Positions 42,971 through 63,259 of a stretch of 64,000 nt of DNA are shown here, piece by piece. Numbering within the stretch: position 1 is the first letter of the stretch; each line of letters starts with the position of its first letter. The notes under the pieces are model-generated. The model was not told the DNA's origin and searched no databases. It was given only the letters and a program-made list of their open reading frames with translations. Origin of the DNA: Thalia democratica (lineage: Eukaryota). The DNA lies in NCBI GenBank assembly GCA_965202585.1, contig OZ241826.1, forward strand, positions 28,148,001 to 28,212,000. The letters are read 5' to 3'. The position numbers and the translations under genes are program-made.

Positions 42971-44374
42971 TTTAACTATCCCGATTTTCTTATAACGTTA
43001 CTTATACGCGCGATGCTGGTTATTATCTGACTCCGTGCGCGTTATAAATATATCGGTGATGTTATTTAAATGTTTAGATATGACTTAGCTAAGTTATTTA
43101 GCTAAGTCGACTTAATGAATTGCGAACTAAACTTCGACTATCTTTTAAGCTTAGTTTAATTAAATAGTTAGATTGTTAGAATGCTTAACTAATTGTATAT
43201 AAGAAATCGAGTCTAGAAACACAAATTGTATTAAAATGAATATAAACTACGATACATGATAACAAAATATACAAATAAACTATTCAAATTTCCAATAAAA
43301 AACAGTCGCCTTCGTACAAGAAGTACGAGGCGACCACAATCTTTTCAAACGATATACTATCAGTACAAAGGTAAAACTAGACTGACTAGAAACTCGCGTT
43401 TTACTCAACTTAAGCATTTTTTGAGATAAAAGGTAGAAAGAACAGCGCATGCTGTTACAAAGCTTGTTTGGAGGTTTTTTTTTGATTTAATAATATACTT
43501 TTAAGATCAGTACTTAATATAACAAATCTTTTATCAATTACTTATGATTATACTCTGTCTAGAATTTTTTTTATATGTTTACTCATGACACTGTAAAAGT
43601 AAACTGAAACTAAAGTTTTATTTCAATGTAAGCTAGTATTTCCGCAGTAGTTCACAGTTATATATAAACTTTAATTGAGTATACATTGCTTTAATAGTAA
43701 GAAGTAGCCAAATATTAGTACTATGAAATTAAACACTGAAAAGTTTTTCTTAATACTTAAAAGTATCTAAAATTTATAAAATAATAGTTTACTAACATTT
43801 TTAAGGAATGGACTAAAAGTTTAAGAATAAAATTTGAGACTTAGGTAAATTAAATAATAAATTAGTTACAGTTTTAAACTAAAACTATATTATAGTTAAT
43901 TTATTCATATTTTTTGTTGATTAAAACTATTCAGTTTTCTTAATAATACGTTTATTTTAACTTAAAAAACGAATCACAAAAAATATAAAACCATCAAAAA
44001 ACACTAAGTACGTAGAGAAAGGTAACTAATTTAATAAAAAATATCTAATTTTCATTAAACTTTGTTAACTTTTAAGTTTGTTTAAACAAGTCACAATAAA
44101 ACTTTAAATAAATTTAATGTAAGATAAAACAAAAGTTTATTCTTTAATACTTGTTTTTATATAACTAATTTAATGCTTAATATTTCAAAATTATTGATAA
44201 CGTGATTATTTAATTAAACCAGAAAACTATTTCAAGGTAAGATTGATTGTAGTTGGATTTTGGTGTATTTCTTTTAGTTTCTGTAAAAAATAACTTTAGT
44301 AAGGTGTAAGTAAATAAGCAAAACATCAAAATACATAAAAAGAAAATTTGTTCAAACTACAAATAAAGTAATAC

Positions 44375-44432
44375 CTTCAAGGTATTTCGATTAATCAGGG
44401 TTAGTTTTGGAAGAGAAAATTCAGACAGTGAC
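44375..44432 (-). CDS. Homeobox gene A, conserved downstream exon (58 nt)
   Basis: tacag|GTCACTG...TTGAAG|gtatt. Same length and sequence as 63202-63259. Phase-1 reading gives GHCLNFLFQN* in both copies. Confidence 0.55.
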
Positions 44433-44739
44433 CTGTAGAAAATTAAATGTTTTGTAGAAATTTTCATCATAGAAATCAATTGTATGTTAGTAAAAAATGC
44501 AACTAAGTATTAAGTATATCTTTATAGTTTTCAGGTTCTTGAGGAGGTTTGTGTAATTAGTATAAAAAATGTTTTAATATAATAGTTGGTTTGTATTAAT
44601 ATACTAACAGAAGCAAAAATATTAAAAAACAAAACGTTATAAACTAAATATTCAAAAAGAAAAACTTTAAATACTACTTGTAGAAAGTATTATGCTTTAT
44701 ATTGGTATATTAACTTTAGTACAAAAAATAAAAACTCTT

Positions 44740-44827
44740 CTAAAGGTAGATACTCTTTCACTAGCTTATTTTTTGTGCGGTTTACACAAGTATCCCTGAA
44801 TTTTTTCCTACGATTGCTCACCCATCT
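44740..44827 (-). CDS. Homeobox gene A, helix-3 exon (RWVSNRRKKFRDTCVNRTKNKLVKEYLPL)
   Basis: tttag| acceptor at 44829-44828; 88-nt homolog of 62798-62885. The donor reads AAGAGT instead of GTGAGT; read-through stops at 44690. Confidence 0.85.
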
Positions 44828-45141
44828 CTAAAAGTATTGTTAAAGTCGATGGACAGAGCTTAAAGCAAATGTTTTTATTACTCAAGGAGTCAAAAGTGTG
44901 TTTTAAATTTATAGTGTGTTCTTTAACAATCTACAAAACTTGGAAAATTGTAAAAATAATGACAAAGTTTTAAAAAAAATCAGATTTTGTCAGTTTAAAT
45001 TTACAAAGTTCCTAATTTTACAAAGCCTTCAAGAGGTAAAAAATAGTTAAAAATCCTTTACAGTCAGAAAAAAGTTGCAAAGTTTTTACTATATACATGT
45101 ATATACGTAATATATAAATGCTAGATCATACAACATCTCAC

Positions 45142-45283
45142 CTCAATTTTAACAACATTCACGACACCTAGTGCTTTCGCCAGTAACTTCTTGTCTTCAC
45201 GTTTCCACACTTTCAATTTGTAACACATTATGTAACTGTGCAGAACTAAAAGCTGCCACTTTTCAAATCGAAGTCTCATTGGT
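45142..45283 (-). CDS. Homeobox gene A, helix 1-2 exon (PMRLRFEKWQLLVLHSYIMCYKLKVWKREDKKLLAKALGVVNVVKIE)
   Basis: aaacag|A...GAG|gtgag, 142 nt. The phase-2 start matches the upstream AG|gtaag donor. Differences to 62113-62254 include synonymous ones (CTT CGA/CTG AGG, AGT/AGC, GAA/GAG, GTT GTT/GTC GTG). Confidence 0.88.
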
Positions 45284-46154
45284 CTGTTTGATGAATTATT
45301 AACAAAAGTTTTAAATTTGCAAACTGTTATAACAAAATGTTTTGTTAGTTAGAAGTGTTAAAAACTTTTTTGAACTTAAGATTAGTTCTCTTTAAACAAA
45401 TGGTAAAAAAATATAACTTTGGTTCGACTTGACTTTAAAACTGTGTGTGGTTTATAAATTCACAAACTAGTACTTTTGTTTAGTAGTAAGTTATTTTATA
45501 AAAAGTTACCATTTAAAAAAAGCAGTTCAAAATATATAAGTTATAAAAAATAAACTTTAGGGGACTCCCCTCTTTGTTATTACCGGTAGTAAAACAGACT
45601 GATCACCTTAGCTAAGTTCCCTAATTATGTTGGGGAAGTATTGGTTTTGTCCATAATAAGTTAGTAAATTTTTGAGGGAGCAAACATATGTAAAATACAA
45701 TAAATTAATTATGAAAGGATAAATAAAAGACTCGAGCTATATTTTATAAGGAGATGAAATAAAGTAAATAAAATGGGAGAAAATTTAACCGTTTAAGTTA
45801 CAGACCAATTCCTTTGAAAAGTTGTTTTTGCAGAATTTTTGAATGCGTATTGTGGATTTTTGAGTTCATAATATGATGCAGCATAATTAAACAAAATTTG
45901 ATAACAGCTATAGTAGTTTCGTACTAGTTTTATAGTTCATATTATATAAAAAATTTAGTATGGATATAAAACTATGAAAAACATATAAATATCTGAATAA
46001 AAAGTTTAAATAAACAAGCGAATACTTATCACATTTTACTCTTAGAAAAAAAAGCTTACTTGCTTTACTTCAACGCGTATTGTTGAAAATAGTAGAACAT
46101 TTTTAATTTGTAGCTAAGAAATAACCTTAATTTCATATAATGTAAACATCTTAC

Positions 46155-46963
46155 CTTCTCCTAGCATTTGTGTACCTCGCTTGTCTTGGTAGTGGTGCCG
46201 CATAAGGATGGTGTCGTCGACTAGTAGGTCGTTGTCCACTGTTCAGCAATTGGTGTTGTTGCTGTACATGGCTCGCTACATTCGCTGATTGCCTTGGTGT
46301 GGCCGTAAAACCATGACTTGGTTCACTGTTCAGGAATCTTGTCGGTTGTTGAAGATCACTGTTCAGAAATCTTGCTGGTTGTTGTTGGGCTCCTGCATAG
46401 GCTTGTTGGCTAAACTGGCCACCTACCTGAGCAGTCGGGTGAGGGAATTGACCAGGGTTTGCCTTGCGAATCGGGCTATTAAACTGTACATGGCCACCTC
46501 TGTGAGCTGATCCATTAAAACTTCCGTAACTAGTTGTCGGAGGTTGACCTCTATAATGCGAATAGCTGCCTAACTGAGCTGGTGCGTTAAACTGCCCATA
46601 ACTTGGTGCCTGTGCTGGTTGGACGGACAGTCTATAGTTCGTCATACTCGCTTGCCCGTTCAAGTGTCCGTAGCTTGCTCTGTAGACCGGTCTAATAAGA
46701 TTACCGTAAGCTGCCAATCCTGGTTGGTTAAGACGTGCATAGTCTACCGTCTGCCCTGGCTGATTGAGCTGTCCATGGTCTGCTCTATATACCGGTCCGT
46801 TAAAATGTCCACTGCTTCCTACGTGTGCTTGTGTACTACGATTTCCATGGCTTGCTATCGGAGAAGAAGTGCTGAAAAGTCTAAAGCTTGCCATTTGAGT
46901 TGGCTTATTGACTTGATAAATTGGAATCTCGTTCAAGTTTGCTTTAACATTTCGTTTAGCTTC
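46155..46963 (-). CDS. Homeobox gene A, large low-complexity (G/Q/N/P/S/Y-rich) exon ending in RHHPY...ARR
   Basis: Acceptor tactaataaacaacgcag|GAA; donor AG|GTAAGA, whose TAA is the ORF-track stop. 809 nt (phase 0 to phase 2). Paralog of 60348-61192. Confidence 0.85.
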
Positions 46964-46990
46964 CTGCGTTGTTTATTAGTATTATAATAC

Positions 46991-47124
46991 TTAAAATGAC
47001 CATAGCTTCCTACGTTTGCTGGTCCAACAGAGTTACCATAGATTGCCATTTGAGCTGGCTTGTTGACTTGATAAATTGGAATCTCGGTCAAGTTTGCATG
47101 CACATTTCGTTTGGCTTCCTGCAT
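46991..47124 (-). repeat. Partial tandem duplicate of the start of the large exon, beginning ATG CAG GAA
   Basis: Encodes MQEAKRNVHANLTEIPIYQVNKPAQMAIYGNSVGPANVGSYGHF, closer to gene B (60342-60477) than to the adjacent exon of gene A. Confidence 0.85.
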
Positions 47125-48379
47125 GTATTTAACTAGATGAAAAAAACAAAAAATTAAAAAGTTATTCAACTTTTTAAAGCAGTAAAACTTTGAAGATTTT
47201 ATACTTTGTGAAAATTAAACAGGTGTAAATTAAATAAAACTTAATTTGTTAAGTAGTATTTGATATTTTTAAATCAAAACCTAAACTGAAAAAATTTAAG
47301 CCTTTTTGCTTTATATTTAAACCTTATAACTCTATATTTTTTCTAAAAACAATCTTTCAAAATTTTATATTTTTTACAACTAAAATTTAAACTTAATGTT
47401 CTAAAGTTAAATTTAAACATTGAATCATATTTAAAAAAATATTTTAAATTTTTAATTAAAATAGTAAGTTTTAAATACTTTAGTAGCAATTCACTATTTG
47501 TAGTATTATCACTGTTTTATGCATTTAAAAACAAACATTTACCTTCTAAGACAAAATACAATTTTACCAAAATAACTTATTTTTGTCAAAAATATAAGCT
47601 GATATGTTTAAAAAGGTAAAAAAATGTTTAGTTGTTTCTAAGTTTAAGGTATAAATGAAGAATGAATTAGCTTTCTGCATTGAAATGAAATTTTGTAACA
47701 CAAAAACTAAAAGTCTACAGTACTCTCAGTGTTTCTCAAACCTTTTTTCATAAGGCCCCCTTTAAATAAATCAATAAGCTAACGGCCCCTGCGAAATAAT
47801 TTTTCAATAAACTACCTAAAGCTTTTTTTTCACTCTCCATCAACAACACCAGAATATGTAGTGTAAGTTTCAGCTTTAGCCAAAATATTTTATATCTCGC
47901 AAATGTTTCAACAAGTTTAAAGTGAAAAATGACCGTCTAAAGTTTAAAAAAGTTTTCATAAAAACCAGTCAGCAATAAAGTTATCCAATTAAGCATTTAA
48001 GTAAACATGATTGTGTATCACAAAGTTCAATAATGAAGTCTTCGTCATAGAAAAGCAAAGTCACTGTAAAACTTATAAAATAAAACGACCGCCCCAGTTA
48101 GCACTCTAAAGATTAAAAAAAACGCTAAGAATGCGGCTTAGCTAAACTACTTAAAAAGCAAAATACCGCTTCTAAAAGATTTAAAAACTCTGATTATAAA
48201 AGCTAGGCATTAGAAGCAATCTGGCATATTTGTTACAGCGCTAGATTTATCTGTTTGTATTTCCCTTCTAGGAAAATATTCCTGTTCTAAGTGGCCTATC
48301 CCAGTATATATACTGATACTTATACCATTTTAAAACCAATATTCGTAAATAAATGAAACTGAACTTATAGGTACTAGAC

Positions 48380-48765
48380 TAGGGTTTCCCAAAATTGGCC
48401 AGATTGCCTATTTTTGGGCCATGATAGATACTCAAAGGGCCACGAGCTGCAAAAGGGCCAGAGGAGCGAGGGGGGGGGGGGAGAAGTGAGTACTTGAAGA
48501 GCCAAAAGGGGGCCATGAGGTAATACTTTGAGATTTAGACTAGATATTGTGGAAGTGTTGAAGAGCAACATAAAAAAAGTTATATGTGTTTTTATTGGTA
48601 AATTTGAAACTTATACTATATATTCTACAGTTGCTAATAAAGAGCAAAAAAAGGTCTTAGGTGTTTCTAATGATAGATTTTTGAGAAGTCATGTTCGGGG
48701 GATGGGGGGACAGCTTTTTATTTCTTTAAAGCGGTCCATTTAAAAAAAACGTTTGGGAAATTACG
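48380..48765. mobile_element. hAT-type MITE, 386 bp
   Basis: Perfect 8-bp TSD TACTAGAC (48372-48379 / 48766-48773; nnnTAnnn). Imperfect TIRs TAGGGTTTCCCAAA ... TTTGGGAAATTACG. A separate unpaired hAT-like end, CAGTGTTTCTCAAACC, lies at 47727. Confidence 0.75.
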
Positions 48766-48777
48766 TACTAGACTCAC

Positions 48778-48870
48778 CAGTAGCAAGCTATGCCAACCAA
48801 AGTGCAATAAGCTTGATACTTGCGAGCAGTAGAAGGATAGCTCCTTTGCTCGTAAACCGTTAAAAACCAT
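48778..48870 (-). CDS. Candidate upstream exon of homeobox gene A (MVFNGLRAKELSFYCSQVSSLLHFGWHSLLL)
   Basis: cattttacag|ATG...CTG|gtgagt, 93 nt, phase 0, compatible with the phase-0 acceptor at 46963. The homologous segment at ~421-526 also has acceptor and donor sites but not the same frame, so it may be UTR. Confidence 0.35.
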
Positions 48871-51800
48871 CTGTAAAATGTAATTGTACAAAGTTTTTGG
48901 CGCTTTTTTTGGTTTAGTAGAGAATTCCATTTTTAATCTAATTACGGTTGTTTTGTACTCTTTTTCTTTGGTTTTAGTACAACAATAAACTATTAATTTT
49001 ATTTTAACTATAATTAACTTGTTTTTTGTTATAGATGAAATTATTGATTTTGTTATAAAATTTAAAATATTTAAAACTATCAACACATGTGACACTTTTG
49101 TAAACTATTTTAATTTAGGACATATTTGAACTCGATAGGTACAAATGTAAACTTGTTAACAAAAGCTTATTTAAAACTATATTAGACACAAACTGTTTTG
49201 AAGTTTTAAATTTTATAACTTAAGTAAGTAGAATTTTATTTAAAAAATGGAATGAACTAGTTTTAAATAAAGTTAGTAATTTTTTACAAAAACAAATAAG
49301 CTTTTGTTATTTCATACATAAAAATTTGAATTGTTTTTTAAATATTTAAAAAGCCGCATGTCAACTATTTTTTTTTCTTGTACTTCTAGTTAAAAAACTT
49401 ATGTTAATAAAAAAAAATTAAAATATTAATAATTTATTTCCAAAATTACTTAAAATCACTATATTTAAAAAGTTATTGTAAACATATATATTGAAAAACA
49501 AAAATAATTCTTAGGTAATTATTAAGTTTACACGAACATTTTTTTTTAATATATGTTACTTTTTGTGATATGGCCTCTTGTTATTTTCAAAGTAATTACA
49601 ATTGTCGGAAATCGAATTGTCTGAGTTCAAATAGTCGTGATCCAATTTTATTTAATAACTTATACATTTGTTTTTTTTTTGTGAATTCTTAACGAACTAT
49701 TTCTTATTTCTCCTTAAAAAAAATTTCACGTGTTGTAATTCTAAATACAAGAATCATAAGGGTATCAACTATTTTATTACTAATACAAAACAGTTCTTTC
49801 ACTAAGTCAATAACTATTTTTCTGGTAAAAGATGCTTTCTTTAAAAATATAATTACCTACAATTTTAAATATAAATGATACACTTTTAACAGTACAGTAA
49901 CAATGGCAGTATTATAGAAATACTTTTTAAAACTAGATGAAACTTTAATTAAGATCAATAAAACTATAGAAATTTAAAAATCATACACATTTTATTCATT
50001 TAGTCAACTTATAGAAAACTTTTGTCTATGAATATTCATAACACTAATTTAAAATACTCGAATACGTAAATAACATAAACGAAAAGTATAATAAAACTTA
50101 CATAACGTTGAGCAATACAAATTCTAATACAAATAATTTTAATCTAAACATGACAATTAACTAAATCTTTTATAAACAATCTCTATTTTAAAGATAGTAC
50201 TAGTTCTTTTAAGGCATAGTTATGAATACTTTGTTTGACAAAAACTTGTTTTTTAAGCCTACAAAAATTAAAATTTACACAAAGCCAAAATCTAATGGAG
50301 TTACACAGATTTTAGAAACATAGCTCAAAAAATAAAACAATATTTTCCGGTTGACTTTTAACAATTTAAAGAAAACATCGGCGAAAGCCTACATAGCCTA
50401 AGCCTTGACCTTCGTATACATTGAGACAAATCTCAGATACGGTTCGCAGTCTACCGAAAGCTTGTGGTCGGATGATCGAAGTAGTATGATTAAATTTTCA
50501 TTTTAATAATTTTAGCATAAATACAATCATAAGTAGTGTTACGATGTATCAAAATAATCACTATTAACAAGTCAACATGCAAAAGTATTCAAGTAGTTCT
50601 TTAAATTCACTTAATTTTGAATACTTTTTTAATATTATTAGGAATCAAAAATGTCTCATAAATTATAAATGTTTGATTTTGCAATCTAAGCTTATGATTT
50701 GATGACCTTTTACAAAATAAAACTGTGAACTGAACTAGCTATTACATAAGTTTAATACTAAGATGGTTAAACAGTTTAATGTCAAACTATTGATGTTTAA
50801 AAAAACTTAGCGTTTTACTACAACTATTCTCTTATTTTTTACTCTAAAAGTGTTACATTTACATAAACTTTAATATTTCACAATTCAAAGTTCATTATTG
50901 TTTGTAAACAATAATATAGCCTATTAAAATTTTAAGTTTTTTTCAAAGTACGGCTTTTGAAAATTATATACATGCAATACGTTTCTTATTTCAAGCCATT
51001 ATTTTCAGAAAGTCAGCGACATTTCTTTCTTTAATAAAAAAACTAATGTTCTAGATAAACTAAAGTTAAACAAAAGCAGTTCGATAACTTACAAGCTTCT
51101 GATTGCCATCCTTTATGATATTAACAAGAAAGTTTTGAAAATTAATAACCTTTTAACTTTAGTAAAAGTCTACACTACGTAAAAAATAGGAAAAGCCGAA
51201 GTATAATATTTTATAATTGTTAAAAGTTTAAAAAACTAATAAAACACCTTAAGTTGCAATTTAATCTAACAATATCATAAAATTTCGTATTTTTTAATTA
51301 CAGTTATAATACTTTCAGTAGTAAATTTAAACTAATTTTAGCTTTAAGTTGTTAATATATACAATGAAGTTAGTTTAACAGATTATCTTACATTTAAGAC
51401 TTATTAGACAAAAAAATAAGACAAAATGATTTTATAAAATTATTTGTTTTTTTTTTATACATGACATATCACATAGTAATAAGGCAGTGTGATCTTCAGA
51501 CTTTGTAAATTAACAGTCAAAAAATTAATAAAAAAGTATAAAGCTTTTTGAAATTTTAGTACCACCGGTTCACCAGCTATATCATGAAGCTTCTTAGGTT
51601 AACAATAAAAACATTAGTAGTTAATAAAATCTGTAATAAACTATCACTATATTTAATTTCAATTTATCTGCAGTTTTAAATACAAACTAGCTGAACTGTT
51701 AAAGAACGATGCGATTTTGGGACTATATATTTTTCTAACACCAATATATACTTTTATATCATTTAAACTACAGCTGTTTTAGTATTAACTGAAATTATTA

Positions 51801-53519
51801 AATATTAAAATTTCTATGTAGCTCAAATGTATTGGAGGCAAAAATTATTAACGGGTGCAACTGGTATTTGCAACTTTCAACTATAAGAGTGTAAATAGAA
51901 AAAAGCAATATTTGTGAAAAAGGATAGCTCCTTTTGGTGAAAACCAGTTAGAAAACTTTTGAACAGTAATAAAAACTATACTTTACAACGTTTTTATACA
52001 AGTACTAAAAAACAAAAACCTAAACTTATGACAAATTTGCAATATTTATGATACTTTTGCACACTTAGTCACGGCTCAAAAATACTCAAGAATTAAATAA
52101 TTAAAACTATTTTAAAATTAAAATTTTATTTAAGCAACATAATACTATAAGTTACTAGTATTAAAAAAATATAATAGACTAAAACATTAAATATTTTATG
52201 ATAAACAGTCACCCGAGTTTGGAACCCATTTGAGTGCATTAATTACAAAAAAAAAATTAAGCAACTATTAAACATTTAAATAAGGCATAACTCATTCATT
52301 ATTGAATAAAAAACTAACAATAACACACATAACAAACATTGGTTATCAATTTAAAATAAGTTATTTACTGCATAATATATTTTTTAATCGACAAAAAATG
52401 TTACTTTTAACAATAAACATACTGACTTTAAAGTAGATTATTAAGTAAAATTACTTTAGATTAAAAAACAACAACAACATTAAAAAGAGAAACAGAACTT
52501 AAAAAGAAAGAGATGAAAACTCATATTTTCTTTAAATTATTTTAATACAATGAACTCTAGCAGATTGTTATTAATACAACTATAAAATAACTCAAAATTA
52601 TCACGAATAAAATAAATTTTACTTTTTCTTTATTAACTTTTGTTGGTTTACGAAATTACAAGTATACTTTAAAGTTTATTATTACCAGTACAAATTTACG
52701 AGTTACACTAATCTTTTAGAATTTTATAAATAATAGTTATAAGTATTTAGACACTACTATTTGTTTTGTTCTATACTTATTACGGTATACCTTAAAACCA
52801 TACAAAAGATCTAAAAAAACTATATTTACTATTTTTTTTTTGACAAATGCTTTTAAAGCAGTAAGTATAAAAACTATAGTGAGAGAGTTAAAAACAATGT
52901 AAACTGAGGACTATTAAAGAGAGACTCTTTTTTTCTCATAAGGGCGGTGAGCTGTTAGCTAATAACAAATTTATCACTTATTATAACACTATTAGGAGAT
53001 GTTGAGAAATATTAATCCAGGTTTATACTTTTTTTTCGTACTTAAAAAAGCTAATTATGATTAAGTAATAGTTTGTTTTGACTAGTGTTAGTATATATGT
53101 TTTTTTAATACTTATATTAAATATTTATAGTTATAAGACAATCTAGTCAACCTATTAAAGTATTAAGCTAAATTTATTAGCTAGTTTTCCACAAAGTTTA
53201 TTTTACACAATCTATGTAATATATAAGCTTTTGTTAAAAACATAAGTGTCAAGTAGCTCAAGTAAGGCGATTCCAAATTAAATTAAACAGGAATATTATA
53301 ACTTTTGATTATTAACTAATAAAAATAAAATTCAAAAATTTATTTACAATACTTATATTTTAATTTTAAGCTTAATATTTTGTGAGCCTAGTCTTTAGAT
53401 ACATTCATATTCATTATGAAGCAAATTTTTATTTAATACAAAAAGATATATTAAATTTTGATTGTTTTGTTTTGAAACTAAATCTTTTGACAGCTGTCTC
53501 TTTCAGTTCAGTTGGCAAC

Positions 53520-54461
53520 ACTAACACAGAATTTCTTGACGTCTCCCTGGACCTATCCCTAAAAACCTACAGTCCCTACCGTAAACCTAATTCCAAAACT
53601 AGCTACATCAACAACAATTCCAACCATCCTAAAAATATACGTAACAATATACCAAAAATGATTGAAAAAAGATTATGCAAACTATCTAAAAATGAAGAAA
53701 TTTTTAATAACATCAAAGGCTTATACCAAAATGCATTAAATAAAAGTAATTTTAAATATAGTTTAACCTACAAACAATTTAATAATACAAATATTAACAA
53801 AATTAGAAAAAGAAATTGCATTTGTTACAATCCCCCCTTTTGTAAATCTGTACAGACTAAAATTGGCAAACTTTTCCTGGATTTAGTAGATAAACATTTT
53901 AAGAAAGACACCATCTATCACAAAATAATCAACAGAAATTCTATAAAAATATCATACTGCTGCACACCAAATATTATGGCCCTTATAAATTCCCACAACA
54001 AAAAACTCACGAAAAAATCAGATAAAAACGAAAAACTTTGTAATTGTAGAATAAAAACAAACTGCCCCGTGGATAACAAGTGTTGCCTAAGTAATGTAAT
54101 ATATCAAGCTAAAGTCTCCACATCCGTAAATGACCACAAGATTTATATTGGTTCAACCACAAGAACATTTAAGTCTAGATATAATGAACACAAAACCTCT
54201 TTCCCAAAACCTTTTAAAAGCAAACCCAAAAATTGTACCAAACTTGCAAATCACCTATGGGATCTATACAGTAACCATATAAAATACTCAATTGAATGGA
54301 AAATAGTAGAATCAGTAAAATCTAACACAAACCATACTAACATGTGCACTTTATGTAACCTAGAAAGACTCCATATAGCCCTAGCAGATAAGAGAAAAAC
54401 CTTAAACAAGAGAAACGAACTGATAACCCAATGCCCACATTACTTAAATGAATATTTATAA
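53520..54461 (+). mobile_element. 5'-truncated Penelope-like retroelement (RT thumb + GIY-YIG endonuclease)
   Basis: FLDV.L.L..KTYSPYRKP..SYINNNSNHP (thumb); CNCRIKTNCP..KC linker; VIYQAKV...YIGSTTRTFKSRYNEH (GIY-YIG); terminal C..C..E...H.C.H. About 310 codons without a stop. Confidence 0.9.
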
Positions 54462-57400
54462 TTTATATCTCACATAGGTATCAATTTTATTAAGATTTTT
54501 TATTATTTGTGCATATATCATAATATTATTCCCATTCTCAGTCTTAAAATATTAAAACTATTTTATTTTTTTCAAGTCTGTTTATTAGTTAAATATATTT
54601 CATTAAGATATAAGATAAATTGTGCATACCCTATAATATACCCATTTCCAGTTGTAAATCATAATTGTTGGAGAATTAGTATATATATATATTTTCTGGA
54701 GTTGAATTATTAGTAGTTTATACTCTCTTTGATTATCTCTCAACTAAATATATTTAATTTTTTATCTTGTTTTTTAAATTTAACATCTGAAATCTAACCC
54801 TCATTCTATTTTTCGCTTATCTAAAATTTTTCACAAAAAGCCATTTTATTCTTTGTCATCATAATACAACTGTGTTAACAACAACAATGCTTTCAAAAAT
54901 TTTTTTTTAATGCTTACTCCCTTGTTTTATTTTGAACATTATTACATTATTAATTTATTATTAGAACTGTGTGCTTAATAATATGTATTTACTACTCCAT
55001 AACTTTTAACTCTGTAAAAGTTATTATCTCTTTAAATCTATTAGATATCAATACCCCACAGTATACTATGGTTTAATTGTATTGTTTGTAGACTATATTT
55101 TGATATTTTTTAAATTAAAGGTTGTTTTGCATTAGAATAATATAATTCTTAAGTTATTTTTTAATTTTTTTGTATATAAACTTAACTCAAACCAATTTTT
55201 AAAGATTTGTCATTTTTAACATTATTATTTTACTACAGATTTACAATTTGAAAATCCGCTCTGCGGTGAAACTGAGTAATTGTAGATCAAACGATTTGGC
55301 AAAGCTGAAAAAAATATGTCCAATTTTTCGATTTTTTTTAGATTTTAAATACCTGATAAACTTCAATTCAATTTTAATTTTGTTTTAACTGATATTAGTC
55401 TATATTGAAATGATAAAGGTAGCTTGAAATAATGGGAGGCAAAAAAAAAACGGTTTGAATAATTTTGCGCAATTTTCAGTAATAAAATAAAGATAGAAAA
55501 AAGAGAATTTTTTAAATTTGAGAGCTCCGGTTTGAATGAAACCGTTGGAAAAATAGCTGAACTGTAATAAAAGTTTTATTTAAAGTATTGTCACTGCAAG
55601 TGGAAAAGTTTTATTAACATTCAAACTTATGACAAATTCGTAATACTTATGACATGTTTGTGTAATTATTTGCCACTCTAAAAAAACTTACTTTATCCGT
55701 AAAATTAAACATTTTAAGTGTTTTAAATACTGCTAATACATTATAAAAGTTTAATTTTTGTAGCTTTGAATTACAAAAAACCTTTATAAGAGGACATTCT
55801 TTGGGTTTTATTTTAAGTATTATCAGTATTTAGGACGCATAAGAGCGCATATATTAAAACATTTGTATTGTGTATTTGTATAATTTTACCATTAGACTTT
55901 ATCGAGTATAATATAAACAAACTAAGAATAAGTTTATGTGTTTTGAAATTACTTAACATTTGTAATAATAAAGATAAAGTGAAAGAGGTTTTTTTATTAA
56001 CACAATTTACTTACTGCACAATAAAGATTTCAATACACATAAAAATGGTATCAACAATAAAAATACTGAACTTAAAAGCTTAGTAAATTTCTTTACATAA
56101 GTTAGTTAATGTAAAAAGTATATATAATGAGAACTTATTTTAAACTTTTTAAATTTCGGTTTTTTAACTGTGTTCTTTATTTTTAATCCATACAACAACA
56201 TATTTGTAAAACAATAAAAGTAAAAATATGTGTATAAATAATGTATATATTAGTTAAGATAGACTATTAAATATTATATTTAAATAAAAATAAACTAACT
56301 TAGAATACTAATATTGTATACATTTTTTCTTGCTAACTTTTTTAGCATTAACGGTATTCTAGTGTTTTTTATGTTTAACGTTGATATTCATGGTTCGAAT
56401 GTTATAACGGTTTTAAATTTTTTGTAAAATGTTTTGAAATAAACATTTAGCAATACTTTTTAGTATAAATTTCGTTTAAATATATGTCAAAATAGTCTTA
56501 AATGTTTTTTTAAAGTTGTTTGTACACTTGAACTTTTTGTTTGAATTTTTTTTGATAGTAGTAAAAATGCATTTGTACTCTAATTAGAGAGTTGGACTCT
56601 TTTTATTTTTAAGGCAGTAAAAAGTTTTAGCTAATAATTTATCAAGTACTTTTTATTATATTATTTGCGTAGCACTATGTTCAAAAATATAGTGCAAGGT
56701 TTATATTTGTTACACTTTTTTTATTAAACCTAGTTATAACAGTGTTTGTCTATAATACAGTTAGGACTAAAAACAAACAAGAACCTATATATATTTTTAT
56801 TTTTATATCTTTGTTATAACTGTTGTCTGCTTTAAATGTTTAAATAATTACAATAAATATTTCAACTAAGAAGGTAACTTAGTTTAACTACTAACTTGTT
56901 AGAAAATTTTTTAGTAGTTTGTTTTACACAAACATATTTAACATTATCGAGCATCACTTAAAGTGAATTATTAACATCGAAAACTTTATAACAAATAAAG
57001 ACATTTATTATAAACTAAATAGTGATTCTCTTTTTCAATTTAGTTTTGTTTATACAGATCAACTTCGCTCCAACTACTACGCTGGAATAAACAACCAGAG
57101 ATGTGAGTTTGAGCTTGATTATTTTATTAATTTATATGTAATTTAACTGAGTTAAATTTTCAAACAACAACGACTATCCTAAATGTTCTGGATGGACCGA
57201 GTTCGATCCGTTTATAGCAGATTTAGGTAGGTATAACGAAAACATATGAAAGTCTAAAAATACTGAAGTAGCATATATTTTTTACTAATAAATTGTATAT
57301 GAAACAATAAGGCTCACTTTAAAGTTCAATGCTTCATGTACTTTTATAAAGTTTTTAATCAATTATTGGTGCTGTAATTTTTGACTAAAACATTAAATTT

Positions 57401-60347
57401 TTTTCGACTTAAAGCAAAAGTTTTTGGTGTATTGCTTTTAACAGACATCAATTAAAGTTGCTTGTGTTTTCTTTTAAAGTAGAGCTACAATTAAAAAAAT
57501 ATTTATTTAGTTTATAAATATATATACTAGATTTTATTCTTTATTGATAAACAACCATTTTCAAAGCGTTTAATTTTTTGAAAACTAACATCATATCTCT
57601 AAAACTTTACTTTTCAAACAGATAAATACTTTGCAAATTGCTCTTTTATTTACCAACAAACTTGTTTTTTCAGTTGTTTAAAAACAAAGATTATTTGCAA
57701 TAAATAATGTTTAAAGATTTATTTCATTTGCAATTGCTAGATATAAAAAACAGTTGTTTGCGGCAGCGCTGCAATAAAATGCTTAAAAATTTATGATTTT
57801 TAGTTTACATTTTAAAATTTACATTAGATTTAGGCTATCAACTTAATAATCAGTTAATGTTTTTTAGTTCCTTATGACCTGTTAAACAATCAGTTAGAAC
57901 GATACTATTACCCAGATGAATGGACCCTTGTATATGAGGCTAGTTTATATACATTATACACCAACTAATTAAATTTGTTTCAATTTGCTCCATTTTCTTA
58001 AAATTTCTTTTAGTGGTCATAAAAATTAATTGTAACATATATTTTTGACTTTACTTCTAGTTTTCAAACTTTATTACAAAAGTTGAATAAAAGGTCAAAT
58101 GAATTATTGACATTCATTTAGGGTTAAATGAAAATAAAGACTTGATATTATTAAATGTAAATCGCAATACAGTTAGTAGTTTGATTTGTTTTAAATAATT
58201 AGATTTCATAAACCATATAGTTAATAAATACATTCGTAGTAGAAATATACACAATGTTCTTGTTTAAAGCACACATTTTTTTAAAACTTGCTTTGGATTG
58301 CTGTCTTAAACCTATTTTTCAACACAAATCATGTTCATACAAAAAAGTTAAAAATTAAACATATTTTCCAATTTTTTTTCAAATGAATGTTTTTAACTTT
58401 AATTTTTTATTAGTTAACAAAAGCTAAGGTATCGACTTAAAATGAGCACCACGTCGCCGTATTGTCCTTAACAAAGTTAGATTCTTGCTGTTAGATGTAG
58501 CGCAATTTAGTAAACCTCTAGTTGCTAAATCTTTGATGTACACATAAATATCTATAAACTTCTATCTGCTCATTGTTAAGCTTATGTTTTTAATCGCTAC
58601 CACATATTGATATTTTTCCATCACTAAAGCTACTTTTTTTACATATAACTAAATTTACTAGATTTTTAACTTTTAAGAGCTTTCAAACAGATTATCTGGT
58701 GTTAAATGAAAACATTTTAGATAGTAAAGTTTTAGCATTCCTAAGTAGAACTTATTGTGACACTACACCTAACTTGAGAAATTTTTCGAGGCACGAAGTA
58801 AAAACTGAACAAATTGAAAGTATTGTACTTTGAACTGTTTCGTTTTTAAAAGACTCAGCTTATTTTTATCGATTTTTAGTCAAAACTCATTTTCCTAAAA
58901 TTTGCTAAAAAACATTATCTATAAGTTTTTTAAAGTATGTTCGTCTTTTTACGCTTGTGTCTTTATAAGCTCAGTTATTTTTAAGTGAACATTATAAAGT
59001 TCATGTTTGCCTTAATTTTTAACTTTATTAGAGAAAATTTGATGAAAGCTTCTAATTTTAGATAAAGCAGCTTTTTCTAAACAATGGATCAGGTTTACTA
59101 GATATAAATTATTTGGGCCGCAGCGTTTTATATATTTGTGCATAAAACTGACTCTTCTTGTTTAACTACCAAAAAAATCATCATATATTTATGTTAAAAT
59201 TAGAAATACAATAGTATTTTCTTTTATTTTTCTTCAAATCCTTCACTCTTATCTTAAGTTTCTTTCTATTCTTCTTAAAATGAAGTACAGTTAATTTATT
59301 AAACATAAACAGTACGTTTTACATCGAAATATGATGAACGGATTTTTAAATTTTTAGATCTTAGTTAGTAAAAAGTAAATTTTTTTGACATAGGTTTGTG
59401 CTACACTCGTTTCTTTATGATATATTTTTGCAGTTGGTTTGTGAACAAGTCATAAAACTGGTCTTTTTTTCACTTGGCTTAGTGTAATGTATAAAGCTTG
59501 TAGACTGTTCATATTTATCTTACATGACGAAAATATAGCAAACTCATTCATTTCTTGTTTGCAACTACTCAAATTTAGACCTCTTATCCAATATATTTAT
59601 AAATATAAACTTAAAGTTTAGTTCGTTTCTGTATTTCAAGCTTGAGTTAATGAAAACAAAAGTAAAAGTTTTATAGAAACTATTTTTCTGCATTTTAAGC
59701 AATTTTTAAAAAGCTATAAAATTAATTTTAACTCATTTGATGTATTATTAAAATAGTACTTACAAAACTGTTTAAAGCAATTTTAGATTGATTTTCTCAT
59801 AAACATTAACAAATTTCGAGCTTTAAAACTGTAGCAATGCATATCTTCTACAAAAATCCAAAACTATTAATTAATTGTTTATTTTATCTTACAAAGATTA
59901 AAAACCATTTAATAAAGTTTGCAAACTGTTGCGAATATTTGAGAACTATAAAGTTTCAAAATAAATTACATTTGTGTATTAAAGTGTTGAAAATTTGTTT
60001 TTAAAATAAATTTAAGAAAACTATTAAAATACTTTAAATTAGTTTCCAAATAAACTGAAGGCTTTATAACTTACATACTTAATAAATGCCGAAAACAACT
60101 ACAAAAATCTCAACTTCTAGAAGAGAATTAATATAGTTTATTCTCTCAAGACTTTAATTAGTAAACTAAGTTTCTGTCAAAGACCTCGTCAGAATTAAAT
60201 TTGAATAATTATAGAGGTACTGACAACTGTAATTATAGAGGTCGTAGACCGAAACTTAGCTTACTAATCAAAGTCTTGAAAGAAAACAAACTATAATAAA
60301 TTCAGTTTAAATTTTCACCAAGTTTTATACTGATAAAAAACTTGCAG

Positions 60348-61192
60348 GAAGCCAAAAGAAATGTGCATGCAAATTTGACCGAGATTCCAATTTATCAGGT
60401 CAACAAGCCAGCTCAAACGGCAGGCTATGGTAACTCTGTTGGACCAGCACACATAGGAAGCTATGGGCATTTTAACCAACCAGCCCAAAACTGTAGAAGA
60501 CCAATTCAGACGGGAGCAAACTTTAATCAACCAGGGCAGACACCAAGCTTTGGGCGTCTCAACCAACCAGGATTGGCAAGCTACGGTAATTTTATTGGAC
60601 AGGCTAGCTATGGCTACTTTAACGGACAAGCCCGAATAACAAACTGGTTGGCACAACCAGGGCATAATAGAGGCGATGGACAGACCAACGGACCAGCTCA
60701 ATTGGGTAGCCATGCGCATTTTAGAGGTCCATCTTCGACAACTACTAACAAAAATTTTAATGGACCGGCTCACATAGGAAGCTATGGGCAGTTTAACAGT
60801 CCAATTCGTATGGCAAACCCTGGAAAATTCCACCACCAGACTGCTCAGGTAGAGGCCTATGGACAGTCTGGTCCACCAGCCCAAGCGGGAATCCCTGGAC
60901 AACAAAAGCTGACCAGTAGACAGCAACCAGCACGTCTAAGGTTCACTGGACAACAACTATTTCTGAACAGTGAACCTCAACAACCAGCAAGATTTCTGAA
61001 CAGTGAACCTCAACAACAAGCAAGGTTCCTGAACAGTGAACCTCGTCATCGTTTAACCGCCGCAAACTTACCAAGGCAAGCAGCAAATGCAGCGAGCAAT
61101 GGACAACAGCGACACCCACCACGTTTACTGACCAGTGGACGGCACCATCCTTATTCACGACCAGGACAAGCGAGGTACGCTAACGCTAGAAA
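60348..61192 (+). CDS. Homeobox gene B, large low-complexity exon ending in RHHPY...ARK
   Basis: Acceptor tactgataaaaaacttgcag|GAA; donor AA|GTAAGC, whose TAA is the ORF-track stop. 845 nt, phase 0 to phase 2. Confidence 0.85.
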
Positions 61193-62112
61193 GTAAGCTG
61201 TTTGTATTATAATTTAACAAGGTTATTACTATTTTTTAGATAGAAAGTTTAAATATTCTGCTATATTAAAAAATACTCGTATAAAGAAAGCATATATGAT
61301 TTTTCTAAGAATTCGATAGTTAGTTTAGAATGTGTTATTTTTAAAATTATTTAAATTTAATATCTTTTTATCAAACAAATTCAACAATCAAACTAGTACA
61401 TAATTACTGTAATTGTTATTAAATCCTGTTAAACTACGCTGCATCAATATATAAAAATTCAAAAACACAAGATGTATTTAAAATTTTACAAAAGCTACTT
61501 ATTATAGAAGTTGTTCTTTTATTTAAAAAAACAATAGAGTACTTTGTAGTAATTCAGTACAATGTATTTGCTACCTTTTTTTACTATACTTTGTCTCATT
61601 CCCTTTTTAAACCTTGTAAAACTATTTGGCTTGAGTATTTTATAATCTTTTTTATAACTAAATTATTATACATCACGTACATTTGCTCACTCAATTATTT
61701 TGTAAGATATTATGGACGAAACTAACACTTCCCCATTATTTAGCAAAGGTGGTCAGTCTTTCTGTAAGAGAAAAGAGGGGAGTCTCTTAGAGTCTAAACT
61801 CAGCTTTTAATTTTTGATCAGTTATAAAATTAATTCGACTTTACATAAACTATGAACATATTTTTTTTTAATTGCAATTTTTTAATACACTTTATTCAAT
61901 TACTGACTACTTTAACAAAAAAAATTTTTGTAAAGTTTTAAGCTGTTCACAGTTTCAAAGTCATATCGAACCAAATTATATTTTTAATACTAATTGTTTG
62001 ATTAGAACTAGTTTTAAGTTTTAAAAGTAGTTTAACACTTTTTAAACAATTTCAAGGATGAATTTTATTTTTAATGTAAACTTAAAATTTAAGTTAAAAA
62101 TTTATCAAACAG

Positions 62113-62254
62113 ACTAATAAGACTGAGGTTTGAAAAGTGGCAGCTTTTAGTTCTGCACAGCTACATGATGTGTTACAACTTGAAATTATGGAAATGTGAG
62201 GACAAGAAGTTACTGGCGAAAGCACTAGGTGTCGTGAATGTCGTGAAAATTGAG
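62113..62254 (+). CDS. Homeobox gene B, helix 1-2 exon (LIRLRFEKWQLLVLHSYMMCYNLKLWKCEDKKLLAKALGVVNVVKIE)
   Basis: aaacag|A...GAG|gtaag; 142 nt, identical length to the gene A exon. Confidence 0.9.
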
Positions 62255-62797
62255 GTAAGAAGTTGTATGCTTGAGTGTATATAGACGTAAATATGGTAAA
62301 ACCATTTATTTAAACTTTATGTACAAATCCATTTCTAGTTGAATAGTCAAACAAACAATATTCTTAGAACCTCTAGTGTAAAAAAAATGATTTGATCACT
62401 TTTAAGTTTATTAAAATTTACTACGCTTATTACCAATCAAATAATCTTTTTAACTCAGCTGTTTTTAATACCAAAGTTCTAAAAGTTTAGTAAAAATTTT
62501 GCACATTTAATAAAAAACGAATATACTTCTAATTATACTAGAAATAAAGTTGCTTTTATTTTAGAAGCGTTTTTTTTTGTTTATAGCCTAGTACTCTCCT
62601 AAAATAAGTTAGGAAAAATTGAGATAGGGCTTAACTTAAAATCAGTGTGTTTAGCATATCTGATTTAATATACAATAAATACATTGTGGTTTTTTATTTC
62701 TTTTGGTTTACTATTTAAACCACAAATTTAAAATGGTGGTTTATAATTTTATCACCTAAAACTTTGTACAAATTTACTCTTCTGTTATGATTTATAG

Positions 62798-62885
62798 AGA
62801 TGGGTGAGCAATCGTAGGAGAAAATTCAGGGATATTTGTGTGAACCGCACCACTGATGAGCTGGTGAAGGAGTATCTGCCTTTAG
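62798..62885 (+). CDS. Homeobox gene B, helix-3 exon (RWVSNRRRKFRDICVNRTTDELVKEYLPL)
   Basis: tttatag|AGA TGG GTG AGC AAT CGT AGG...TTA G|gtgagt; 88 nt. W48, N51 and R53 are in register after the phase-0 intron. Confidence 0.9.
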
Positions 62886-63201
62886 GTGAGTATTTATTTT
62901 CATTACCATAGTTAATATATCAATACAAAGCTTAATGTTTTCCATAAAACTTTTTTTTTTTAATTTAACCATTAAGCTTTTCATGTTCTATTTCTTGTTA
63001 TATTTAAATCTATTTCTTAGTGTCTTGATACGAACCAAGCAACGTCTTAAATAATAACAAAAATACATTTCACCATCTTTAAATTTTTAAACATACTCAA
63101 GTATATATAAATAAATTACTCTGAGTACTAAATACTTAGTTGCATCTTATATACTAACAAGTCTCACTTATTTATAAAACATTTTTTTTAACTTTCCACA
63201 G

Positions 63202-63259
63202 GTCATTGTCTGAATTTTCTATTCCAAAATTAACCCTAATAAATCGAAACAATTTGAAG
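63202..63259 (+). CDS. Homeobox gene B, probable last coding exon (GHCLNFLFQN*, stop 63231-63233)
   Basis: ttccacag|GTCATTG...TTGAAG|gttag; 58 nt as in gene A. The three differences before the stop are all synonymous in this frame. A further conserved acceptor opens an exon at 63356 (44280 in A). Confidence 0.6.

What the first reader, a model, noticed from the sequence alone, without database searches (positions are those of the whole stretch)
44375..63259. Hidden head-to-head pair of divergent homeobox genes with prion-like N-termini
Seen: both Q/G-rich ORFs end at a TAA inside a GTAAG donor (phase 2). The next conserved exons are 142 nt (phase 2 to 0) and 88 nt in both copies, while the introns differ in length (871/920 and 314/543 nt). 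Spliced, they give R[RK][PL][MI]RLRFEKWQLLVLHSY[IM]MCY[KN]LK[VL]WK[RC]EDKKLLAKALGVVNVVKIE|RWVSNRR[KR]KFRD, with 54/63 residues identical between copies. Established: R5, F8, Q12, L13, L16, L34-A35, L38-G39, W48, N51 and R53 are homeodomain hallmarks, and a phase-0 intron between codons 46/47 is characteristic of PRD-class homeoboxes. Inference: a lineage-specific, duplicating homeobox family that ORF-based annotation would miss.
Basis: partly seen in the sequence, partly recalled or inferred. Interest (0 to 1): 0.9.

Follow-up and report, generated by a model that had tools for sequence, protein, structure and literature searches.

The report
Spliced orphan genes with homeodomain-like end
Two mirror-image copies of a multi-exon gene found only in this marine animal lineage are real and under selection, and their hidden C-terminal exons encode a 63-residue domain that looks like a very divergent homeodomain but fails every standard significance test.

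Summary
Both long Q/G/N/P-rich ORFs stop at a TAA inside a GTAAG donor. Both are followed by a 142-nt and an 88-nt block with AG/GT borders. Intron lengths are 920/871 and 543/314 nt, as stated. The blocks are 88-91% identical between copies, against 53-71% for introns. Purifying selection is clear: dN/dS is 0.18 for exons 2+3 and 0.42-0.49 for exon 1. Splice sites and phases recur in two Tara Oceans metagenome contigs. About 20 contigs from genomic runs match exon 2, so the family has several copies.

No RNA data could be obtained, so splicing is inferred.

The homeodomain reading is plausible but unproven. Pfam gives no homeobox hit. The best solved-structure matches are homeodomains, but only at E = 0.07-0.4 (Lhx9 over the full length, MATalpha2 over helix 3). 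hhalign gives 38% probability. AlphaFold models exon 2 alone as one unbroken helix, unlike a truncated genuine homeodomain.

PRD-class membership is not shown. The spacing is 63 residues, as in MATalpha2, and LIM genes share the 46/47 intron.

Both copies have an unresolved 5' end, and copy B has lost the exon 3 donor.

The scan's own readers also noted parts of this locus, on this same window. Verdict: a real gene family with no detectable relatives, and about 0.55 that its end is homeodomain-derived.

The parts
57868..57938 (+). Candidate upstream coding exon of copy A, encoding PYDLLNNQLERYYYPDEWTLVYE. It is preceded by tttttag| and ends in phase 0. The donor would be the non-canonical GAG|GCTAGT in A and GAA|GTTTGT in L001.
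   Evidence: 79% identical to L001:5-98, with mostly synonymous changes. It lies on the same strand and in the same order as in L001. Its link to the gene is inferred.
60148..60311 (.). High-copy short repeat (MITE-like) just upstream of copy A's long exon. Not part of the gene.
   Evidence: Summed contig depth is about 56,000-68,000 here, against 30-500 nearby.
60348..61192 (+). Copy A long exon (281 codons + 2 nt). It holds a conserved N-terminal peptide, a Q/G/N/P/A-rich low-complexity region with SYG/FN repeats, ARFLNSEPQQ repeats, an RHHPY motif and a basic arm. It ends at AA|GTAAG, with the ORF's TAA inside the donor.
   Evidence: dN/dS is 0.42-0.49 against copy B, L001 and L002.
60959..61044 (+). 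33-nt tandem repeat, 2.6 copies, encoding the ARFLNSEPQQ motif.
   Evidence: Tandem Repeats Finder: 94% matches. The motif is present 2-3 times in all four copies.
61746..61784 (+). Conserved G+C-richer block inside intron 1 of copy A, also in copy B and L001. It is flanked by AG and GTAA. It could be a cassette or poison exon, or a regulatory element.
   Evidence: It occurs only in these two places in the window.
62113..62254 (+). Copy A exon 2 (142 nt, phase 2 to 0). It covers positions 2-46 of the homeodomain-like region, plus three extra residues.
62798..62889 (+). Copy A exon 3. It encodes RWVSNRRRKFRD and a conserved tail. The donor is at 62885 (GTGAGT) or 62889 (GTATTT).
63202..63259 (+). 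Copy A exon 4 (58 nt). With the 62885 donor it reads GHCLNFLFQN then stop (63232-63234). With the 62889 donor it stays open (SLSEFSIPKLTLINRNNLK) up to a conserved AAG|GT.
46991..47130 (-). Copy B: partial duplicate of the start of the long exon. It is 92% identical to copy A 60336-60475 and out of frame with the main ORF.
46155..46963 (-). Copy B long exon (cgcag|GAAGCT ... AGAAG|GTAAGA).
45563..45609 (-). Copy B counterpart of the conserved block in intron 1.
45142..45283 (-). Copy B exon 2 (142 nt).
44736..44827 (-). Copy B exon 3. The GT at the 88-nt position is lost (ag|aagagt). The next GT is at +4 (44735).
44375..44432 (-). Copy B exon 4 (58 nt), followed by AAG|GTATTA.

Best explanation
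These are two divergently oriented paralogs of a multi-copy protein-coding gene family with no detectable relatives outside two marine metagenome contigs. The host is a very AT-rich marine planktonic animal.

**How the gene works (inferred).** Each gene is spliced with GT-AG introns. The TAA that ends the long ORF lies inside the GTAAG donor and is removed by splicing.

**The product, in order:**
1. A conserved N-terminal peptide.
2. A basic, Q/G/N/P-rich low-complexity region with SYG/FN repeats.
3. Two or three ARFLNSEPQQ repeats.
4. An invariant RHHPY motif, which resembles a PY-type nuclear import signal.
5. A basic arm.
6. A strongly constrained 63-residue helical domain.
7. A conserved tail.

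**Most likely function.** The 63-residue domain is most likely a highly derived homeodomain, which would make the protein a nuclear DNA-binding transcription regulator. The domain has W48, V49, S50, N51, R52, R53, three extra residues, and a phase-0 intron at position 46/47.

**What is shown and what is inferred.** Exon conservation, selection, splice-site conservation and copy number are shown. Splicing itself, nuclear location, the homeodomain fold and DNA binding are inferred.
For: **The gene is real and spliced as proposed.**
- Exon islands are 88-91% identical, against 53-71% for introns.
- dN/dS is 0.18 for exons 2+3 and 0.07 for exon 2 against L001. It is 0.42-0.49 for exon 1.
- The phase-2 GTAAG donor and the exon 2 acceptor and donor are kept in L001. 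L002 keeps the donor and the acceptor but ends inside exon 2.
- 21-25 genomic contigs match exon 2. In several of them homology begins about 15 nt before the acceptor, and 12 of 19 variant sites are at codon position 3.

**The domain resembles a homeodomain.**
- The family profile's best solved-structure hit is the Lhx9 homeodomain, aligned end to end (E = 0.12).
- MATalpha2 homeodomains top the sub-region searches (E = 0.07-0.4). Their two aligned segments share one offset, so there is no net gap relative to a 63-residue homeodomain.
- hhalign against Lhx2/9 homeodomains gives P = 3.4e-4 over 60 columns. 1 of 389 column shuffles reaches the real score.
- The family HMM scores intact Lhx homeodomains at 10.6-14.9 bits, while 1e-4 of shuffles reach 12 bits.
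- Exon 2 alone, without the WxxNRR motif, scores 6.65 bits (median) against homeodomain positions 1-45. Only 2.7e-4 of shuffles reach that.
- The intron falls exactly at 46/47, as in the cnidarian PRD genes hbn, otp and rx (PMC2938728) and in some Lhx2/9 genes.
- RHHPY is invariant in all four copies.
Against: **Against the homeodomain reading.**
- Pfam gives no Homeodomain or Homeobox_KN hit at E <= 10 for either spliced product or for exon 2.
- Every homeodomain match is sub-threshold.
- The exon 2 profile alone does not retrieve homeodomains from the solved-structure sequences.
- AlphaFold2 models exon 2 (47 aa) as one continuous helix at pLDDT 78. A genuine Lhx homeodomain cut at the same place gives helix-loop-helix.
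- Helix 1 would be unusually hydrophobic, and the loop has no helix breaker.
- The Lhx9 alignment needs two separate insertions (2 + 1 residues).
- Lhx2/9 was chosen after the fact as the comparison family, so the shuffle p-values are optimistic.

**Against the gene model.**
- No RNA run could be listed. The three runs that hold the locus behave like DNA and show no splice joints.
- Copy A lacks an in-frame start codon in the long exon.
- Copy B has a 5' partial duplication and has lost a donor, so either copy could be decaying.
Confidence: 0.55

Rival explanations
1. The gene model is right, but the constrained C-terminal region is not a homeodomain. It is another small helical module. One option is a Myb/SANT-like three-helix domain made of the second, third and fourth predicted helices (W-x23-W-x24-Y, with RT before the last helix). 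Another is a novel hydrophobic helical interaction domain. In either case the WVSNRR resemblance would be convergent.
For: - The SANT domain of DnaJC2 aligns over 51 residues at E = 0.35-0.62, with matching W...W spacing and the RT motif.
- Pfam finds no homeobox.
- Exon 2 alone is predicted as one long helix, unlike the homeodomain control.
- Exon 2 alone retrieves no homeodomains.
- The tail after the putative homeodomain is as conserved as the domain itself.
Against: - Pfam finds no Myb or SANT hit either.
- The SANT alignment needs a 5-residue deletion that removes exactly the best-conserved VSNRR.
- Homeodomains outnumber all other hit families: 4 of 7 hits and 4 of 9 (5 if 2da4_A, recalled from memory as a homeobox domain, is counted).
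- The basic arm with R5, F8, Q12 and L16, and the intron at 46/47, have no counterpart in SANT domains.
Confidence: 0.3
2. The two copies in this window are decaying or non-functional members of the family (pseudogenes or recently disabled duplicates). Other paralogs elsewhere in the genome carry the function.
For: - Copy A has TTG where L001 and B's duplicate have ATG. It has ACG where four of five copies have a conserved in-frame Met.
- Copy B has an out-of-frame 5' partial duplication and has lost the GT of the exon 3 donor.
- One paralogous contig carries a 1-nt deletion in exon 2.
Against: - All reading frames are open in both copies.
- dN/dS between A and B is 0.18 in exons 2+3 and 0.42 in exon 1.
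- The AG acceptor is intact in all copies. An upstream exon would make the missing ATG irrelevant.
- Both copies keep a GT at +4, which restores an open frame through exon 4.
Confidence: 0.1
3. No splicing occurs. The gene product is the ~280-residue low-complexity protein that ends at the TAA. The downstream conserved blocks would be separate features: exons of another transcript, or regulatory DNA.
For: - No transcript evidence was obtainable.
- Database gene callers report only the truncated ORF.
Against: - The stop sits inside a consensus GTAAG in all four copies, always in phase 2.
- The downstream blocks have AG/GT borders at conserved positions, continue the frame, and show a codon-position-3 excess and low dN/dS on this strand.
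- The blocks are more constrained than the ORF itself.
Confidence: 0.05

Closest known systems
Yeast MATalpha2 and other 63-residue (TALE-type) homeodomains
   Same: - Helix 3 matches: WVSNRR[KR]K, against WVSNRRRK in MATalpha2.
- V49 and S50 are shared.
- The spacing from the RF of the N-terminal arm to W48 is the same, with no net gap.
   Different: - There is no P-Y-P-type loop motif.
- Helices 1 and 2 show almost no residue identity.
- Only the helix 3 segment scores.
- The rest of the protein is unrelated.
LIM-class Lhx2/9 homeodomain (PDB 2dmq)
   Same: - It is the only solved structure that aligns over the whole domain (E = 0.12-0.38).
- Shared features are R5, F8, Q12, L16, SY[FM] at 18-20, a G before helix 3, and KFR after N51/R53.
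- Some Lhx2/9 genes are split at 46/47.
   Different: - The alignment needs insertions of 2 and 1 residues.
- Identity is 25%, and hhalign probability is only 38%.
- There are no LIM domains.
Fast-evolving, tandemly duplicating lineage-specific homeobox families such as eutherian ETCHbox (LEUTX, ARGFX, TPRX) and DUX
   Same: - Local duplication.
- Rapid divergence outside the DNA-binding domain.
- Restricted taxonomic range.
- An intron at 46/47.
- These families were also missed or mis-annotated at first (PMC8208926 and PMC6258689, listed; own knowledge).
   Different: - Those families still score as PRD-class homeodomains with standard HMMs and have 60 residues.
- This family does not score and has 63 residues.
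- Nothing is known about its expression.
FET-family architecture (FUS-like low-complexity region plus PY nuclear import signal)
   Same: - [S/G]YG-type repeats in a region that is 51% G/S/Y/Q/N/P with few acidic residues.
- An invariant R-H-H-P-Y just before the structured domain.
   Different: - There are no RRM, RGG or zinc-finger parts.
- G+S+Y+Q content is well below my recollection of the FUS low-complexity domain.
- The import-signal reading is by motif only.
SANT/Myb domain (DnaJC2 SANT, PDB 2m2e)
   Same: - W-x23-W spacing.
- An acidic-then-LL-x-x-AL first helix.
- RT before the last helix.
   Different: - The alignment needs a deletion of VSNRR.
- There is no Pfam Myb hit.
- The third aromatic residue is 24 residues away, not 19.

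Membership tests
Homeodomain superfamily (Pfam PF00046 / PF05920) | Significant match to the family HMM | tested here: not met
   hmmscan of both spliced C-terminal products and of exon 2 gives no Homeodomain or Homeobox_KN hit at E <= 10. HMMER's filters drop most hits above about 0.1, so a very weak match could be hidden.
Homeodomain superfamily (Pfam PF00046 / PF05920) | Helix 3 signature W48-F49-x-N51-R52/K-R53, followed by basic residues at 55 and 57 | tested here: met
   The sequence reads W-V-S-N-R-R-[KR]-K-F-R and is invariant in both copies. V replaces F49, as in MATalpha2.
Homeodomain superfamily (Pfam PF00046 / PF05920) | Similarity across helices 1 and 2 and the N-terminal arm, beyond helix 3 | tested here: inconclusive
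   The exon 2 HMM against Lhx homeodomain positions 1-45 scores 6.65 bits (median), and 2.7e-4 of shuffles reach it. But the exon 2 profile retrieves no homeodomain from the solved-structure sequences. hhalign gives 38% probability, and 1 of 389 column shuffles reaches the real score.
Homeodomain superfamily (Pfam PF00046 / PF05920) | Three-helix fold with a helix-turn-helix | tested here: inconclusive
Exon 2 alone is modelled as one helix at pLDDT 78. A genuine homeodomain cut at position 46 gives two helices and a loop.
PRD class of homeobox genes | Phase-0 intron between codons 46 and 47 | tested here: met
   The junction is KIE|RWVSN, which gives E46|R47-W48. The same position is split in Nematostella hbn, otp and rx (PMC2938728). 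It is not exclusive to the class: some Lhx2/9 gene fragments also end at 46/47.
PRD class of homeobox genes | 60-residue homeodomain that groups with PRD families; S, K or Q at position 50 | tested here: not met
   S50 is present, but the domain has 63 residues. The best full-length match is LIM class and the best helix 3 match is MATalpha2. No detectable relative exists in 1.84 billion representative proteins. No class phylogeny could be built.
TALE class of homeobox genes | Three extra residues between helices 1 and 2 (63-residue domain) | tested here: inconclusive
   The total length is 63 and the domain aligns to MATalpha2 with no net gap. HMMER and hhalign against Lhx9 instead place 2 extra residues in the loop and 1 before helix 3.
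TALE class of homeobox genes | Loop motif of the P-Y-P type and TALE-specific flanking domains | tested here: not met
   The loop reads CYNLK[LV]WK[CR]ED and has no proline. No Pfam domain is found upstream.
Myb/SANT domain | Significant HMM match and three regularly spaced aromatic residues | tested here: not met
   There is no Pfam hit. One solved-structure hit appears at E = 0.35-0.62. The spacing is 23 and 24 residues, and the alignment needs a 5-residue gap.
Prion-like / FET-like low-complexity domain | Strong Q/N or G/S/Y/Q enrichment with few charged residues | tested here: inconclusive
   Q+N is 19-21%, G/S/Y/Q/N/P is 51%, D+E is 2.5% and K+R is 9-10%. The region is low-complexity and repeat-bearing, but below typical prion-domain Q/N content. 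No dedicated predictor was available.

The most novel reading that the evidence does not exclude
This may be a previously unrecognised type of animal homeodomain. It would have 63 residues, V49 and S50, extra residues relative to the 60-residue form, and the ancient 46/47 intron. It would be fused to a FET-like low-complexity region and a PY-type import signal. It appears to be amplified to several loci, perhaps ten or more, in an under-sampled marine planktonic lineage, and it is invisible both to ORF callers and to standard homeobox HMMs.
Probability: 0.45. Interest if true: 0.55.

Novelty: new variant of a known kind. Interest (0 to 1): 0.42.

Why it matters
If the domain is a true homeodomain, homeobox surveys based on Pfam/HMM hits and ORF-level gene calls miss a whole expanding family in this lineage. 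The family would also add a case of a 63-residue homeodomain joined to a phase-separation-type region. That combination is useful for studying how young transcription factor families arise.

If it is not a homeodomain, it is still a strongly constrained orphan domain with no relatives among 1.84 billion representative proteins. Either way, the locus shows that the two 'orphan' low-complexity proteins called from Tara Oceans contigs are truncated exons of a larger spliced gene.

Tried and rejected
**Transcript evidence.**
- The first run search returned three runs that cover introns as evenly as exons and show no splice joints, so they are DNA.
- The second search, on the long exon with the library word RNA-Seq, listed none.

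**Looking for relatives.**
- The long exon, searched against 5.8 billion proteins, gave only two truncated ORFs from Tara contigs.
- The exon 2 profile, searched against 1.84 billion representatives, gave only a spurious repeat protein.
- The JGI metagenome scan found no relative.
- The ESM Atlas returned nothing usable.

**Structure prediction.**
I did not resend it.
- Structure prediction was therefore limited to exon 2 and a control. No fold search was run on these fragments.

**Identifying the organism.**
- The neighbouring PARP-like ORF matched only unnamed metagenome proteins.
- Rfam and tRNA scans of the window were empty.

**Building a comparison set of homeodomains.**
- The search seeded with the Lhx9 homeodomain printed returned only close Lhx2/9 relatives, many cut at the intron. 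Profile comparisons are therefore against one class only.

**Ideas rejected.**
- The ATG in ATGCAG is not the start codon. It is present in only 2 of 5 copies, while the AG is present in 5 of 5.
- A 27-nt intron cannot repair copy B's 5' duplication. It is too short and gives the wrong frame.
- The weak match to the upstream exon at 59454-59422 on the minus strand is not an exon.

Full report
**1. Setting**

The window is about 25% G+C, with G+C-richer islands at coding exons. It contains no N. Copy B lies on the minus strand at about 43951-47130. Copy A lies on the plus strand at about 60327-63690. Their 5' ends face each other across 13 kb. That spacer holds a long ORF with a GIY-YIG-like motif (my reading; no Pfam hit) and other repeats. 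Homology between the copies is confined to these two intervals.

**2.

Direct reading confirms the following:
- Both long ORFs end at a TAA inside a GTAAG donor, in phase 2.
- The 142-nt and 88-nt blocks have AG and GT borders.
- Intron lengths are 920/871 and 543/314 nt.
- The spliced 63-residue stretch is 54/63 identical between copies.

**3. It is more than chance**

| Segment | A/B identity |
|---|---|
| Exon 2 | 90% |
| Exon 3 | 88% |
| Exon 4 coding part | 91% |
| Exon 1 | 76% |
| Introns | 53-71% |

- Exons 2-4 show 14 synonymous against 11 non-synonymous codon differences.
- Nei-Gojobori dN/dS is 0.18 for exons 2+3 between A and B, and 0.07 for exon 2 against L001.
- dN/dS is 0.42-0.49 for exon 1 in all six pairwise comparisons.
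- The hidden exons are therefore the most constrained part of the gene. The low-complexity exon is coding but under looser constraint.

**4. Relatives elsewhere**

- The long exon finds only two proteins among 5.8 billion. Both are ORFs called on Tara Oceans marine metagenome contigs, and both are cut at the same TAA.
- Contig L001 keeps the phase-2 GTAAG donor and has exon 2 with the same acceptor and donor. It is 93% identical at protein level, against 59% for exon 1.
- Contig L002 keeps the donor and the exon 2 acceptor but ends inside exon 2 (87% identical over the part present).
- This is comparative support for the splice model. It also shows how ORF-based calling truncates the gene.
- In genomic runs that hold the locus, 21-25 contigs lie on exon 2. 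In several of them homology begins about 15 nt upstream of the acceptor.
- 12 of 19 variant sites are at codon position 3. One copy is frameshifted.
- The family therefore has several copies, though no exact count can be given from summed contig depth.
- The exon 2 profile has no relative among 1.84 billion representative proteins or in JGI metagenomes.

**5. What could not be shown**

- No RNA run could be listed.
- The three runs found cover introns and exons alike and show no splice joints.
- Splicing therefore rests on comparative evidence only.

**6. Corrections to the gene model**

*The 5' end.*
- The long exon is probably internal. AG directly precedes GAAGCN in all five versions of its start: A, both B versions, L001 and L002. 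ATG is there in only two.
- The first 23 residues are highly conserved.
- A candidate upstream exon at 57868-57938 is conserved with L001:18-88, mostly through synonymous changes. It ends in phase 0.
- Its link to the gene is inferred, and its donor in copy A would be a GC.

*Copy B.*
- It carries a 140-nt out-of-frame duplicate of the exon start that is 92% identical to copy A.
- It has lost the GT of the 88-nt donor.

*The 3' end.*
- Both copies have a GT four bases further on. Using it makes exon 3 92 nt and opens a conserved frame through the 58-nt exon 4, up to a conserved AAG|GT.
- The alternative is available only to copy A. It ends the protein with GHCLNFLFQN.
- Both exon 4 frames show mostly synonymous differences, so the 3' end is unresolved.

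**7. Is the domain a homeodomain?**

*For:*
- The helix 3 motif W-V-S-N-R-R-[KR]-K-F-R is present.
- There is a basic arm with R5 and F8, then Q12 and L16, and S-Y-M at 18-20.
- The family profile's best solved-structure hit is the Lhx9 homeodomain, aligned end to end at E = 0.12.
- MATalpha2 homeodomains lead the sub-region searches (E = 0.07-0.4). Their two aligned segments share one offset, which implies the same 63-residue spacing.
- hhalign against Lhx2/9 gives P = 3.4e-4 over 60 columns. 1 of 389 column shuffles reaches the real score.
- Composition-matched shuffles reach the observed HMM scores at about 1e-4.
- Exon 2 without helix 3 still scores above all but 2.7e-4 of shuffles.
- The intron is exactly at 46/47 (PMC2938728).

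*Against:*
- Pfam reports no homeobox at E <= 10.
- Exon 2 alone retrieves no homeodomain.
- hhalign probability is only 38%.
- Lhx2/9 was picked after the fact, so the shuffle p-values are optimistic.
- AlphaFold2 models exon 2 as one unbroken helix. A true Lhx homeodomain cut at the same position gives helix-loop-helix.

*A rival reading:*
- A SANT-like reading of helices 2-4 scores about as well as some homeodomain hits, at E = 0.35-0.62.
- It has to delete the VSNRR core to do so.

I put homeodomain descent at about 0.55-0.6.

**8. Class**

- PRD membership is not supported. The length is 63 residues, no relative of any kind was detected, and the 46/47 intron also occurs in Lhx2/9 genes.
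- TALE membership is not supported either, because the loop motif is missing.
- The class is unassigned.

**9. The N-terminal region**

- Composition: Q+N 19-21%, G/S/Y/Q/N/P 51%, D+E 2.5%.
- It carries SYG/FN repeats and a 33-nt tandem repeat that encodes ARFLNSEPQQ.
- RHHPY is invariant in all four copies. It fits the R/K/H-x(2-5)-PY rule for PY-type import signals (own knowledge).
- 'Prion-like' overstates this. 'Basic low-complexity, FET-like' is fairer.

**10. Most likely mechanism**

The most likely product is a nuclear regulator. Its C-terminal derived homeodomain would bind DNA, and its low-complexity part would serve activation or self-association. The family is young and duplicates locally. 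Only the sequence-level steps are shown. Everything functional is inferred.

The spliced protein could therefore not be folded or searched remotely. That fold is the decisive missing test.

Noticed in passing
window 4312-5921 (-), 12688-14414 (-), 29933-31687 (+): There are three copies of a single-exon ~580-residue gene with a PARP catalytic-domain match (Pfam E = 8e-7 and 3e-5). One copy is broken into three ORFs. Relatives are found only in unnamed marine metagenome proteins.
   Followed up: partly
window 23186-24363 (+): A C-rich tandem-repeat region is open in all three plus-strand frames for about 1.1 kb. It has a strong GC skew (-0.45) and no Pfam hit. It is probably a satellite or minisatellite rather than a gene.
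   Followed up: partly
window 53376-54458 (+): A 359-residue ORF rich in K/N carries a GIY-YIG-like motif (IYIGST...RYNEH). It lies in the spacer between the two gene copies and is possibly a remnant of a Penelope-like element. It has no Pfam hit.
   Followed up: partly
window 60148-60311: A short repeat with inverted-repeat ends has an extreme summed contig depth (56,000-68,000) in all three runs. It looks like a very abundant MITE-like element, inserted just upstream of copy A.
   Followed up: no
window 61746-61784 (+), 45563-45609 (-); L001 about 2000-2070: Intron 1 contains a G+C-richer block conserved in copies A and B and in contig L001. It occurs nowhere else in the window. It is bordered by AG and GTAA, but its length differs (20 against 28 nt). 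It could be a poison or cassette exon, or a regulatory element.
   Followed up: partly
window 42541-42957 (-): A 138-residue ORF rich in S/E/R/K has a repeated KVRATEART-type end. It has no Pfam hit.
   Followed up: partly
proteins P0011-P0020: Metagenome ORFs of Lhx2/9 genes stop at two different places in the homeobox, after Q46 or after Q50. This suggests two alternative intron positions in this family across taxa.
   Followed up: no
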